From: Octopus sinensis
Taxonomy: Eukaryota
DNA length: 61,674 nt
Direction: 5' to 3'
Assembly (NCBI RefSeq): GCF_006345805.1
Contig: NW_021834616.1
Span: forward strand, 1-61,674
Shown: positions 12,701 through 15,700 of the stretch, in pieces
Layout of the letters: each line of letters starts with the position of its first letter
Position numbering within the stretch: position 1 is the first letter of the stretch
Translations under genes and position numbers: made by a program
The notes under the pieces: generated by a model
What the model was told of the DNA's origin: nothing
Databases searched by the model: none
Seen by the model: the letters and a program-made list of their open reading frames with translations, nothing else

Positions 12701-15700
12701 CAGACAATCTGACCAATTGGTTTTGCAACAGATATTAGATAACTAAATGGTTATCTATACATGTGCTCTTCAGAGATGGCAGTTATAGAGAAAACATGGT
12801 GCTTGCTCTCTGTTATTGGAGTGTCACATTTGGCTAGTGTGTGCTGTGGGGAAAGCAAAATAAAGTGTGGGATTTATGAAGAGTTATGTACCTTTGCTTC
12901 AAAAAGCTGAGTGAAATGTACAGCAAGACTATAGTGGGCAAATGTGTGTGTAAGAGGGCTGATGTGTTTGTACAAGTTTTTTCAAGAGGGAATAATGCAG
13001 GAGGGGGGAATTATGTAGGTTAACCCACATTATTGGATGTATATGCTTATGTGTACCTATGGAGTATAGTTTAGACAAAACTTTTCAGGGTTCTCAGGAT
13101 GTCATGGTGAAAAGACTGATGGTGGAATCCAAGCATTTATAATCATGATGAGCCCCATAGGTAAGCCAACATGTATCTTCTCTAATGAGGACATAGGCTG
13201 AAAATCTCATTTCTGCAGTTTTGGTGGAAGTCTGGGAGAAGAAAATTTTTTAACATAGTTCGTTTCTCATCATGACATACCCTGCACTTTCTGCTACTAT
13301 TAAAATAAAGCTTGCACTTTTTTTCAAGATTTTCCACCTGATTTTCTAATCTGTGACATTCATTGACATTAAATGCTGAGCCAGGGCTGTGACATTGCAG
13401 CTGTCATTGATCTATAATACTGTATATTTTGAAACATACACACACACACACACACACACACACAAATATACATGCATATTTTACGCAGACACATATATAC
13501 ATCCAAATATTAATATATATATATATCTGTATGTGTGTATAAATATGTGTATGTATATATGCATGTTTGTAGTATGTATGTACTGATATATATATATTAG
13601 ATATATATATATATATAATATATATATATATTATATATATAATACTATACACACACATCGTGTTAGAAACCTATGCATAACTTGAAGGTTTTTTATGCAT
13701 CTATATAACAAATGACAACAGCAGCACAACATATATATATATATATATATATATATATATATGTATGTATGTATGTATATGTATGTATATATGCATCAAT
13801 ATGCATACATATATATACAAATATATGAATATGCATATATGTGTAAATACCTATTATACTATATATATGCATGTATATATACATATACATACACACACAT
13901 ATATTTACTATAATATATATATAATATATATATATATATATGCATGTGTGGATGTGTGCAAATGCATTTGTGCTTATGTGTATGTATACAGATGTAGCCC
14001 TAATTGGTAACTTACAGGTCTGTTGTATCCATTGGGATGTCTCTAGGGAAATGCTTCAGCCCTTGTTTGATGCAGCGTACAACTGTCCCAGAACATACAC
14101 ACCTTGGTGGGCAATAAGCCCTTGGGTCACAACTGTTCTCCATTTTCTCTGGAAAAAAAAAGCATCAATGAAAAAAATGAATATATATATATATATATAT
14201 ATATATATATATATATATATATATAATATATATAGATATATATATATATATATATATTTATATGCAGGTATTTTTTTTGCGGGAGCAACTGTTTATCGAA
14301 GGCACATCTTATTGTGAAATGTTTGAAATATGAATTCAAAAAACAGCCAACAACTGATGAAGGATCGTTCTTTGTGCTATTTGTCTTGTTGTGGAGACAG
14401 CCAAAAGAACCATTTGATCAAGAATGCCTTCTTCCAACTTTTAAACATGGACGAGGATCTGCGATGATCTGGGTGGGGTGGGGGCTGTATTTTAGAAATC
14501 CGCTGGTCCAATGGTTCCCCTTCATGGCAGAATTAATAGTCAAGGCTATTTAAGTATTTTATCTGACCAAATTCATTCTTAGCATTAGTGGATGTACAAC
14601 AGAAGGATGTTTATCCTTTTTTACCAGTATGAAGGTCAAGCAATTAATGTGAGTATTTCTGTCTGTATTCGATGGAGAGGAGGGGAAGGTGATGGATCAC
14701 TAGTCAGCATCATTAGTTTCATAAAAAAAAATGATTGCAATAAAAACTTACCCATAGCAGCAGATGGACAACAGGTTGGTTTTGCAACATTGCATCCCAT
14801 CTCAACATTTAGATTTGCTGCAAAGACAATAAAAACAATAAGTATAGATGAGAAAGATATATATATAGAGATATATATATAATATATATATATATATATA
14901 TATAAGAGGGATGACCACTGAGAGGACATCCATATGCCAGAAGTCAACCCCCTATAGCCTTTAATAAGAAAGGAATGTTCACAAGAAAATTTAGCAAACG
15001 CCAGAACATAAGCAAGCAAGACAAATGCAAATATACAAAATATACAGATTAATCACAAACCAGTTTCGTTGTTACCACTTATGTAATCACCTAGATGTCC
15101 GCAACTCCTCAGTGTGATCGTCATAGCAAAATATAATTTGCAGAACTATACAGGAGATGACCGTATGGGATTGAATATGTATATAGTTCTACCAATTACA
15201 TTTGGGGTTATATTTCAAAATTCTTCGTTTTGGCACGCCAAAAATACCGGAAATAATTCTGCAGAAAATAATTCTCTGCAGTAAATTTTGCCGGTTAGAG
15301 AACATAGTTATTTAAATTCCTTTCTTAGTGGTAAGGCCATGGGGGGTCGACTTCTAGCATATGGATGTCCACTTAGTGGTCATCCCTCTTATATGTATGT
15401 AATATAATTTTTCTGAATCTTCAGATTTTTCTATATGCTAGACCACTGGTTTTAAATTGATATTAATCAAATTAATATTCAATTTTTCACCCTTATTATT
15501 TAAATTTATATATAAATAAAGGAGAAATGCGTGTTTGAAGAAGAAAAAGGGTAAAATGATCCATGGTGGCAGTGTTAGATGTATTTACAAATAAGCAGGA
15601 GTAATAAGCTGAAGGAACTGGCAGGGTACCTTGGGCTAAACCACGAGCAAGGTGTTTGGATGCTGTGTGGTAAGTAGCTTGCTTACAAACCACATGGTTC

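What the first reader, a model, noticed from the sequence alone, without database searches (positions are those of the whole stretch)
15052..15118. Core-intact hammerhead ribozyme on the slit sense strand just upstream of the 66-nt exon
Seen, minus strand: ATCACA CTGAGGA GTTG [30 nt] CAAC GAAA CTGG TT|TGTGAT. All conserved core positions are present (C3 U4 G5 A6 N7 G8 A9, G12 A13 A14 A15.1, U16.1, H17). Stem I is a perfect 6 bp, stem II has the canonical G10.1-C11.1 pair, and the predicted cut (GUU, between 15058 and 15057) is about 240 nt upstream of the W17 acceptor. Stem III is only 2 bp plus a 2-nt loop (ACUGGU, quasi-palindromic), the architecture of Penelope-associated hammerheads that act as dimers (established). 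Inference: a retroelement-derived self-cleaving RNA is positioned where it could sever the intron co-transcriptionally and influence W17 choice or slit output, analogous to conserved intronic hammerheads in amniotes. Caveat: it is probably one of many genomic copies, and a lone copy may be inactive without a dimer partner.
Basis: partly seen in the sequence, partly recalled or inferred. Interest (0 to 1): 0.7.

Follow-up and report, generated by a model that had tools for sequence, protein, structure and literature searches.

The report
Retroelement-borne hammerhead relic in slit intron
A complete but weak-looking hammerhead ribozyme motif really is present in an intron of a slit-like gene, but it looks like the leftover of a Penelope-type retroelement insertion, an ordinary feature of invertebrate genomes, and nothing shows that it cuts or regulates the host transcript.

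Summary
The motif is real and sits exactly where it was reported: minus strand, 15119-15051, predicted cut between 15058 and 15057. All core positions are present. Helix I is 6 Watson-Crick pairs plus one G-U, helix II is 4 bp, and helix III is the self-complementary ACUGGU. Chance is unlikely: 2 of 4000 shuffled windows matched a strict descriptor.

Rfam Hammerhead_1 aligns it over the full model, but at 17.1 bits against a gathering score of 34. It appears only in a 91-nt search. The score loss comes from a 30-nt helix II loop.

The motif abuts a ~150-nt repeat (R) that ends in (TA)n. An inverted, 5'-truncated R copy lies upstream, and a solo R copy sits inside a microsatellite at 27.6 kb. 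This matches published Penelope-like insertion anatomy.

There is no tandem array, no partner hammerhead of the same family within 61 kb, and no RT or endonuclease ORF. The monomer helix III is sterically impossible as drawn. In native context, helices I and II are predicted not to form.

Verdict: a retroelement-derived type I hammerhead relic, probably inactive alone. The proposed splicing role is unsupported, and conservation could not be tested. Low interest.

The parts
15051..15119 (-). Type I hammerhead motif. Helix I 5' strand 15119-15113; core CUGAGGA 15112-15106; helix II 15105-15102 and 15071-15068; 30-nt loop 2 at 15101-15072; GAAA 15067-15064; helix III string ACUGGU 15064-15059; H17 = U at 15058; predicted cut between 15058 and 15057; helix I 3' strand 15057-15051.
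   Evidence: RF00163, 17.1 bits, full model; shuffles.
14905..15050 (-). Repeat R, copy A. About 146 nt lying directly 3' of the hammerhead on the same strand; interpreted as the 3'-terminal segment of the retroelement.
   Evidence: Self-BLAST and nhmmer; alignment A1.
14857..14904 (.). (TA)n microsatellite abutting the 3' end of R copy A; the likely insertion target.
   Evidence: period 2, 24.5 copies.
15288..15406 (+). Repeat R, copy B. It is 5'-truncated, inverted and head-to-head with copy A, with 86% identity to A over 92 nt. A and B together form the inverted repeats that bracket the unit.
   Evidence: (I2), (R positions 47-145).
15120..15287 (-). Stretch between the hammerhead and inverted copy B. 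It is unique in the window and contains two hairpin-forming palindromes (15203-15129 and 15295-15246). Presumed to be an upstream part of the same insertion; origin not established.
27638..27790 (+). Repeat R, copy C. A solo copy lying between a (TG)n(TA)n run and a (TA)n run, with no hammerhead. Its homology starts about 8 nt 3' of the position equivalent to the predicted cleavage site.
14752..14817 (-). Candidate 66-nt exon: polypyrimidine tract, then CAG, then the exon, then GTAAGT. It is open only in the frame required after the upstream 164-nt exon. Unverified.
16754..16917 (-). Upstream slit-like LRR C-terminal cap exon ([12 protein letters not shown]...), which defines the 5' side of the intron that holds the hammerhead.
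   Evidence: compare for the paralogous cap exon at 55678-55515.

Best explanation
The motif is the hammerhead ribozyme of a retroelement fragment. The element is a Penelope-like element, or a non-autonomous, retrozyme-like derivative of one. It inserted, together with an inverted 5'-truncated copy, into a (TA)n microsatellite inside a slit intron. Its orientation happens to match slit transcription.

In the element's own life cycle, such hammerheads are thought to pair as double hammerheads between adjacent copies on multimeric transcripts and cut the RNA to unit length (inferred from the literature). Here only one copy remains. It carries a 30-nt loop in helix II and has no partner, so it is most likely a catalytically weak or dead relic that is spliced out with the intron and has no role in slit expression.

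Shown: the motif, its improbability by chance, the adjacent repeat with its three copies, and the absence of a partner. Inferred: Penelope-type origin, and inactivity.
For: - Motif and chance.
- Full-length alignment to RF00163 that also matches non-core consensus positions (GAGU...ACGAAAC...GU). Rescaling its E-value to the whole window for this one family gives about 0.01 (my arithmetic).
- Architecture equals the published 'canonical metazoan type I' hammerhead: helix I 6 bp, helix II 4 bp, helix III 1-2 bp with a 2-4 nt palindromic loop (PMC4209133).
- R lies directly 3' of the motif on the same strand and ends in (TA)n. An inverted 5'-truncated copy is adjacent. A third, solo copy is embedded in microsatellite.
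- This matches the described PLE anatomy: frequent 5' truncation, an inverted 5'-truncated copy at the 5' end, microsatellite/(TA)n targets, and the hammerhead near the 3' end (PMC8557442).
- A second, textbook case sits in the same window: a 195-nt insert bounded on both sides by (TA)n that carries a minimal hammerhead at 21167-21201.
- Three motifs with a self-complementary helix III were observed, against 0.0375 expected per window.
- Divergence among R copies is 14-29%. This fits the old PLE expansion reported for Octopus vulgaris (PMC13282606), if the window is indeed from an octopus.
- Against activity: (monomer helix III forbidden; hammerhead-compatible fold -3.3 vs MFE -11.5 kcal/mol; helices I and II at probability 0.0 in context; double-hammerhead structure -21.8 vs dimer MFE -34.4). 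No partner or tandem array.
Against: - No reverse transcriptase or GIY-YIG ORF was found in the window, so assignment to Penelope-like elements rests on insertion anatomy alone.
- The hammerhead-bearing stretch (15315-15042) has no second copy in the window. That the hammerhead and R belong to one element is therefore inferred from adjacency, not shown.
- No related copies could be fetched from any collection, so there is no family alignment and no covariation.
- The Rfam score is below gathering.
- A 30-nt loop 2 is atypical for this class.
- All 13 helix pairs and the full core are intact even though the flanking repeat copies differ by about 14%. This could hint at constraint, or could simply be luck.
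Confidence: 0.72

Rival explanations
1. Exapted intronic ribozyme. The hammerhead cleaves slit pre-mRNA co-transcriptionally, alone or with a partner in trans, and modulates inclusion of the 66-nt exon or slit output, as proposed for the conserved intronic hammerheads of amniotes.
For: - It lies on the sense strand, 240 nt upstream of a phase-compatible candidate exon with good splice signals.
- The core and all helix pairs are intact although the neighbouring repeat copies have diverged by about 14%.
- There is a precedent for domesticated type I hammerheads in introns (PMC6155905).
Against: - No dimer partner in cis within 61 kb.
- The monomer helix III is not formable as drawn.
- Helices I and II are outcompeted in native context.
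- There is a 30-nt loop 2 and no loop 1, so no tertiary contacts of the kind needed at physiological Mg2+.
- RF00163 scores only 17.1 bits against 34.
- H17 = U and N7 = G are not the preferred variants (my own knowledge).
- Minimal and dimeric PLE hammerheads show low activity in vitro (PMC4209133).
- From my own knowledge (Dye, Gromak and Proudfoot 2006), hammerhead cleavage inside an intron need not disturb splicing.
- No conservation or transcript data are available.
Confidence: 0.04
2. Chance match. An AT-rich intron happens to contain CUGANGA and GAAA boxes with flanking complementarity, and the adjacency to a repeat is a coincidence.
For: - The Rfam score is below threshold, and the hit appears only when 91 nt are searched.
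- Folding energy is no better than shuffles (z = 0.12).
- The long unstructured loop 2 widens the search space.
- At 5e-4 to 2e-3 per window, a multi-gigabase genome would hold tens of chance hits if many windows were scanned.
- No second copy of the hammerhead segment was found.
Against: - Only 2 of 4000 shuffled windows reach the observed quality.
- The match extends to non-core consensus positions of RF00163.
- Helix III is self-complementary, as in real family members.
- It lies on the same strand as, and within 1 nt of, the 5' edge of a retroelement-like 3' fragment.
- The window is enriched for hammerhead-like motifs of the PLE kind.
Confidence: 0.12
3. The 520-nt unit at 14887-15406 is a MITE, a non-autonomous DNA transposon with terminal inverted repeats of about 90-120 nt. 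The hammerhead-like sequence is internal cargo, either fortuitous or captured.
For: - Inverted repeats with 86-88% identity flank a ~310-nt core (I2).
- The size is typical of MITEs.
- The flanks are TA-rich.
- The open frame at 14236-14550 has a motif reminiscent of Tc1/mariner transposases, but Pfam did not confirm it.
Against: - Homology between copies A and C runs about 50 nt further inward than the inverted repeat, so the arms are unequal.
- Copy C is solo, with microsatellite on both sides and no inverted partner.
- All three copies share the same outer end next to TA-rich repeats while their inner ends differ. That is the pattern of 5' truncation of a retroelement, not of transposon termini.
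- No transposase domain was found.
Confidence: 0.1

Closest known systems
Canonical metazoan type I hammerheads of non-LTR retrozymes and satellite-like repeats (Schistosoma Sm-alpha, newt satellite 2, mussel and axolotl retrozymes; Rfam RF00163)
   Same: Type I topology; a full catalytic core; helix I of 6 bp; helix II of 4 bp with G10.1-C11.1; helix III of 1-2 bp with a short self-complementary loop that implies action as a dimer (PMC4209133, PMC7229834).
   Different: - Loop 2 is 30 nt instead of a few nucleotides.
- There is no loop 1 or closing stem, and so no tertiary contact.
- It is not in a tandem array of ~170-400-bp units.
- It scores half of Rfam's gathering threshold.
- H17 is U rather than C.
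Minimal hammerheads in the pseudo-LTRs of Penelope-like elements (Cervera and de la Pena 2014)
   Same: It is associated with a 5'-truncated retroelement fragment, near that fragment's 3' end, inserted in a microsatellite with an inverted truncated copy alongside. The 15.2-16.2 region is self-complementary, and G10.1-C11.1 is present.
   Different: - PLE min-HHRs usually have a longer helix II (6-8 bp), an unpaired base after A9, a shorter helix I, and little or no loop 3. The motif at 21167-21201 fits that description better than this one does.
- No PLE ORF is present here.
Naiad-type PLEs with 'HHR_half_core' arrangements (Craig et al. 2021)
   Same: The (TA)n insertion preference; ancient remnants reported in cephalopods; the CUGANGA and GAAA boxes are separated by 35-50 nt in some elements, and the separation here is 38 nt (PMC8557442).
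   Different: - Naiads are reported to lack canonical hammerheads, whereas this motif has all three helices.
- Membership cannot be tested without the RT/EN sequence or consensus libraries, and the supplementary sequences are not held.
Conserved intronic hammerheads of amniotes (RECK, CTCL and DTNB introns; Rfam HH9/HH10)
   Same: A type I hammerhead on the sense strand of an intron, thought to derive from retroelement hammerheads (PMC6155905).
   Different: - Those are deeply conserved and keep the loop-loop tertiary contacts. Here conservation is untested and the contacts are absent.
- The best Rfam clan match here is RF00163, well below threshold.

Membership tests
Hammerhead ribozyme, type I (RF00163 / canonical metazoan type I) | Conserved core: C3 U4 G5 A6 N7 G8 A9, G12 A13 A14, A15.1-U16.1, and H17 not G | tested here: met
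   CUGAGGA ... GAAA ... U, with U at H17.
Hammerhead ribozyme, type I (RF00163 / canonical metazoan type I) | Three helices around the core with helix I open-ended; helix I about 6 bp; helix II about 4 bp with G10.1-C11.1 | tested here: met
   (I = 7 including one G-U, II = 4); structure line.
Hammerhead ribozyme, type I (RF00163 / canonical metazoan type I) | Short helix III (1-2 bp) with a small self-complementary loop that allows a double-hammerhead dimer | tested here: met
   ACUGGU is self-complementary with two G-U pairs (duplex -3.2 kcal/mol). As a monomer only 1 bp plus a tetraloop is possible.
Hammerhead ribozyme, type I (RF00163 / canonical metazoan type I) | Loop 1 / loop 2 tertiary interaction needed for activity at physiological Mg2+ | tested here: not met
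   Loop 2 is 30 nt with only weak internal pairing, and helix I has no internal loop or closing stem. Some mussel retrozyme hammerheads also lack the archetypal contacts (PMC7229834).
Hammerhead ribozyme, type I (RF00163 / canonical metazoan type I) | Score at or above Rfam's gathering threshold | tested here: not met
   17.1 bits against 34. No hit.
Hammerhead ribozyme, type I (RF00163 / canonical metazoan type I) | Site-specific self-cleavage | not testable with these tools
   Needs in vitro transcription or mapping of RNA ends.
Penelope-like element pseudo-LTR hammerhead | Insertion anatomy: 5'-truncated copies, an adjacent inverted 5'-truncated copy, a microsatellite target, and the hammerhead near the 3' end | tested here: met
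   compared with PMC8557442.
Penelope-like element pseudo-LTR hammerhead | Linked ORF with a telomerase-like RT and a GIY-YIG endonuclease, in at least some copies | tested here: not met
   No RT, EN or transposase domain in the 150 longest non-repetitive open segments of the window. Truncated copies are expected to lack it. Full-length family members elsewhere in the genome could not be searched.
Penelope-like element pseudo-LTR hammerhead | Many genomic copies forming consensus families with compensatory changes | not testable with these tools
   The source genome is not available. The collections gave nothing. The hammerhead segment is unique in the window.
Non-LTR retrozyme | Tandem repeats (at least a dimer) of ~170-400-bp units, each carrying a type I hammerhead | tested here: not met
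   TRF finds only microsatellites, and there is a single hammerhead of this type. Solitary monomers do exist in frogs (10.64898/2026.07.22.740005).
Domesticated intronic hammerheads (HH9/HH10 type) | Conservation at the orthologous intron position across distant species | not testable with these tools
   No orthologous sequence was retrievable.
Domesticated intronic hammerheads (HH9/HH10 type) | Match to the Rfam HH9 or HH10 models | tested here: not met
   No hit at gathering. In one search the best clan member was RF00163, and one lower-scoring clan match was suppressed.

The most novel reading that the evidence does not exclude
The hammerhead has been co-opted. It would be retained at the orthologous slit intron across octopods, and cleave the pre-mRNA 240 nt upstream of a 66-nt cassette exon that lies between two LRR domains. 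Cleavage might be aided by a protein chaperone, or by pairing in trans with transcripts of the same repeat family. The effect would be to tune inclusion of that exon or slit dosage in the nervous system. This would be the first domesticated intronic hammerhead outside amniotes.
Probability: 0.03. Interest if true: 0.7.

Novelty: new member of a known kind. Interest (0 to 1): 0.17.

Why it matters
As it stands, this is one more genomic copy of a class known to occur in thousands of copies in invertebrate genomes, so it mainly confirms that such motifs can be recognised by eye. It would matter only if the copy proved to be conserved and active. Then it would extend ribozyme domestication in introns beyond amniotes and tie it to an axon-guidance gene.

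A smaller point of interest concerns the repeat family. The solo copy of R begins within about 8 nt of the predicted cleavage site. If that holds genome-wide, it would be direct genomic evidence that hammerhead cleavage defines the 5' end of the transposing RNA in this family.

Tried and rejected
- **Rfam at gathering score over the window, and at E<=10 over 401 nt:** no hammerhead reported. Only a 91-nt search revealed the sub-threshold RF00163 alignment.
- **Protein-database search with the open frame spanning R and the 66-nt exon,** hoping to reach other copies or orthologous contigs: nothing.
- **Same database with the slit LRR cap exon:** nothing. Neither exon mapping against a reference protein nor retrieval of orthologous loci was therefore possible.
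- **Two metagenome scans, one with the hammerhead pattern and one with an R pattern:** zero hits and two chance hits in bacterial-looking contigs. L001 and L002 share only the ~24-27-nt pattern region with R.
- **Pfam on ten selected frames, then on 150 open segments:** only noise, with no RT, GIY-YIG or transposase domain.
- **Supplementary consensus sequences of cephalopod PLEs:** not held.
- **tRNA-derived SINE origin:** no tRNA-like sequence.
- **L1-style twin priming as the source of the inverted copy:** rejected, because both arms carry the same 3'-terminal sequence, tails outward.
- **Heterodimer with the two other hammerhead-like motifs:** rejected. They lie on the opposite strand, and their helix III strings (ACGU, ACAUGU) do not pair with ACUGGU.
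- **Cofold 'dimer stabilisation' (-34.4 vs -23.0 kcal/mol):** discarded as evidence. The predicted dimer pairs loop 2 with loop 2, not helix III with helix III.
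Full report
**1. The observation**

On the minus strand, the window reads GATCACA CTGAGGA GTTG [30 nt] CAAC GAAA C TG G T T TGTGATT over 15119-15051. 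With standard hammerhead numbering this gives:
- C3-A9 at 15112-15106
- G10.1-C11.1 closing a 4-bp helix II
- G12 A13 A14 A15.1 at 15067-15064
- C15.2 and G16.2 flanking UG
- U16.1 at 15059
- H17 = U at 15058
- a helix I of six Watson-Crick pairs plus one G-U

It is 240 nt upstream of base 14817, the first base of a 66-nt interval bounded by a polypyrimidine tract plus CAG on one side and GTAAGT on the other.

**2. Is it more than chance?**

A type I descriptor written for this check required CUGANGA, helix II of at least 3 bp with a loop of up to about 60 nt, GAAA, helix III of at least 1 bp, U16.1, H17 not G, and helix I of at least 4 bp. It finds only this site on either strand.

In dinucleotide-preserving shuffles of the whole window:
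- the relaxed descriptor gives about 0.02 hits per window
- hits as good as the real one (I>=6, II>=4, III>=2) occurred in 2 of 4000 windows
- hits with at least 13 helix pairs occurred in 8 of 4000 windows

Within this window, chance is therefore improbable. Across a multi-gigabase genome, tens of such chance hits would still be expected, so context matters.

**3. Rfam**

No family reached its gathering score in the window. No hammerhead appeared at E<=10 in a 401-nt search. When only 91 nt were given, which relaxes the filters, Hammerhead_1 (RF00163) aligned 15052-15118 on the minus strand over the full model (positions 1-45) at 17.1 bits. The gathering score is 34, and E was 0.06 for that small search.

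The alignment matches consensus positions beyond the invariant core (GAGU ... ACGAAAC ... GU). The lost score is placed on a 34-nt insert where the model expects about 10 nt in helix II. Rescaled to one family over the whole window, the E-value is about 0.01 (my arithmetic, not a tool result). The motif is thus a recognisable but sub-threshold type I hammerhead.

**4. Structure**

- The isolated 71-nt stretch folds no better than its shuffles (z = 0.12).
- A 2-bp helix III closed by a 2-nt loop is forbidden in the nearest-neighbour model. A monomer can offer only A15.1-U16.1 closing a CUGG tetraloop.
- The hammerhead-compatible monomer fold is -3.3 kcal/mol, against an MFE of -11.5.
- Helices I and II have pairing probabilities of 0.4-0.6 in isolation. 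These fall to 0.0 when 80 nt of native flank are added on each side, because the region pairs with its neighbours.
- ACUGGU is self-complementary with two G-U pairs (-3.2 kcal/mol as a duplex). A double-hammerhead secondary structure is feasible at -21.8 kcal/mol, but lies far above the dimer MFE of -34.4, which uses loop 2-loop 2 pairing instead.
- Loop 2 is 30 nt with weak internal pairing. Helix I has no internal loop or closing stem, so the loop-loop contacts that make natural hammerheads fast at physiological Mg2+ are not recognisable.

**5. Surroundings**

*Repeat R.* Directly 3' of the motif, on the same strand, lies a ~146-nt repeat that I call R (15050-14905). It runs into a (TA)n microsatellite at 14904-14857.

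*Copy B.* A second, shorter copy lies inverted at 15288-15406, with 86% identity. The two copies are head-to-head, with their 3' ends pointing outward.

*Copy C.* A third copy at 27638-27790 is solo and sits between (TG)n(TA)n and (TA)n.

*Pattern.* All three copies share the same outer end, and their inner ends differ. This is a 5'-truncation series.

*What is absent.* The hammerhead plus the ~195 nt upstream of it (15315-15042) has no other copy in the window. TRF finds no tandem array, ARAGORN finds no tRNA-like sequence, and Pfam finds no RT, GIY-YIG or transposase domain in the 150 longest non-repetitive open segments.

**6. What this anatomy corresponds to**

Craig et al. describe Penelope-like element insertions as:
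- highly 5'-truncated
- often accompanied by an inverted 5'-truncated copy at the 5' end, which forms inverted repeats
- biased toward microsatellites, including (TA)n
- carrying hammerheads within pseudo-LTRs near the 3' end (PMC8557442)

Cervera and de la Pena describe the canonical metazoan type I hammerhead as helix I 6 bp, helix II 4 bp, and helix III 1-2 bp with a 2-4-nt palindromic loop. It acts as a dimer between neighbouring copies. Single minimal PLE hammerheads were inactive in vitro, and dimers only weakly active (PMC4209133). Later work places most type I hammerheads in non-autonomous retrozymes that derive from PLE pseudo-LTRs (PMC7229834; 10.64898/2026.07.22.740005). The locus fits this picture as a solitary, truncated copy.

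**7. Independent support from the same window**

A descriptor for PLE-type minimal hammerheads allowed an optional base after A9, no loop 3, and C3-G8 or U3-A8. It finds two further motifs, both on the plus strand.

- *21167-21201:* GTTT CTGACGA A GAGC tcc GCTC GAAA CG T T AAAC. It lies in a 195-nt GC-richer insert bounded on both sides by (TA)n. This is a textbook truncated PLE insertion.
- *48108-48155:* a U3-A8 variant with helix III ACATGT. Its 5' half is part of a 30-nt inverted repeat with 47880-47909.

All three motifs have a self-complementary helix III string, where 0.0375 such hits are expected per shuffled window. Rfam does not recognise the two minimal ones.

**8. Host gene**

The LRR C-terminal cap exon at 55678-55515 (minus strand) has human Slit2 and Drosophila Slit as its best solved-structure matches.

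A splice-site and motif scan finds a chain of 72-nt LRR exons and a second 164-nt cap exon at 16917-16754, all on the minus strand in one consistent phase. The 164-nt exon leaves one base over, so the next exon must supply two. That is the only open frame of the 66-nt interval, and 66 nt preserves the phase.

The hammerhead is therefore on the sense strand, in the intron between a cap exon and a plausible but unverified small exon. No transcript data or reference protein could be obtained.

**9. Most likely mechanism**

In its element of origin, the hammerhead would pair with the hammerhead of an adjacent unit on a multimeric transcript and cut the RNA to unit length (inference from PMC4209133 and PMC7229834).

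Copy C begins about 8 nt 3' of the position equivalent to the cleavage site. That is what a template whose 5' end was made by hammerhead cleavage would leave, but it is a single observation.

At this locus the motif is alone, has an oversized loop 2, and is predicted to be sequestered by its flanks. Two literature points add to this: PLE hammerhead cleavage was dispensable for insertion in vitro, and no reads ending at the hammerhead site were seen for an anole PLE (PMC11167929).

I therefore judge it a relic without a role in slit expression (confidence about 0.7). Residual weight goes to chance (about 0.12), a MITE-like origin (about 0.1) and exaptation (about 0.04).

**10. Novelty and score**

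Retroelement hammerheads of this architecture are known in thousands of copies in many invertebrates, including molluscs (PMC7229834). In frogs, about 44% of retrozyme copies overlap introns (10.64898/2026.07.22.740005). This is a new member of a known kind, and interest is low unless conservation or cleavage is shown.

Noticed in passing
window 21099-21294 (+), motif 21167-21201: A 195-nt GC-richer insert bounded on both sides by (TA)n. It carries a compact PLE-type minimal hammerhead: GTTT CTGACGA A GAGC-tcc-GCTC GAAA CG T T AAAC. It has a bulged base after A9, palindromic ACGU, and G10.1-C11.1. It is antisense to slit. It is a better match to the published min-HHR description than the reported motif, but Rfam does not recognise it.
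   Followed up: partly
window 48108-48155 (+), with 47880-47909: A hammerhead-like motif with the U3-A8 covariant core (TTGATAA), a 5-bp helix II, a 13-nt loop, palindromic helix III ACATGT and a 4-bp helix I. Its 5' half belongs to a 30-nt inverted repeat (one mismatch) with 47880-47909, and (TA)n starts about 130 nt downstream. It could be a real PLE variant or an AT-rich chance hit.
   Followed up: partly
window 27638-27790 (+) compared with 15057-15042 (-): The solo copy of repeat R starts about 8 nt 3' of the position equivalent to the predicted hammerhead cleavage site, directly after a microsatellite. This is what an RNA template whose 5' end was made by self-cleavage would leave. It is a single case and needs a genome-wide pile-up of copy 5' ends.
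   Followed up: partly
window minus strand: 55678-55515, 45235-45164, 38667-38596, 30768-30697, 29598-29494 (upstream boundary uncertain), 19272-19201, 19070-18999, 16917-16754, 1770-1699: A chain of slit-like exons: 72-nt LRR exons and two 164-nt LRR C-terminal cap exons, all in one consistent phase. The window therefore spans roughly the end of one LRR domain, a whole further domain, and the start of the next.
   Followed up: partly
window 14236-14550 (+): An open frame containing ...[19 protein letters not shown]..., which from memory resembles a conserved stretch of Tc1/mariner transposases. Pfam gave no hit at E<=0.01, so this remains unconfirmed.
   Followed up: partly
window 15662-15833 and 17312-17483: A 172-nt direct repeat with 87% identity and 1650-nt spacing, each copy ending in a (TA)n/(TG)n run. 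It is another dispersed repeat family in the same intron region.
   Followed up: no
window 15246-15295 and 15129-15203 (-): Two hairpin-forming palindromes just upstream of the hammerhead. The first gave weak, sub-threshold miRNA-like and sRNA-like Rfam matches, and the second forms a long stem in the context fold. They are probably part of the same insertion.
   Followed up: no
window-wide: Microsatellites are very dense: (TA)n, (TG)n, and trinucleotide runs giving long poly-D/N/S/L open frames (for example 50.3-51.5 kb, 33.4-33.9 kb, 58.1-59.3 kb). These generate many long spurious ORFs.
   Followed up: no
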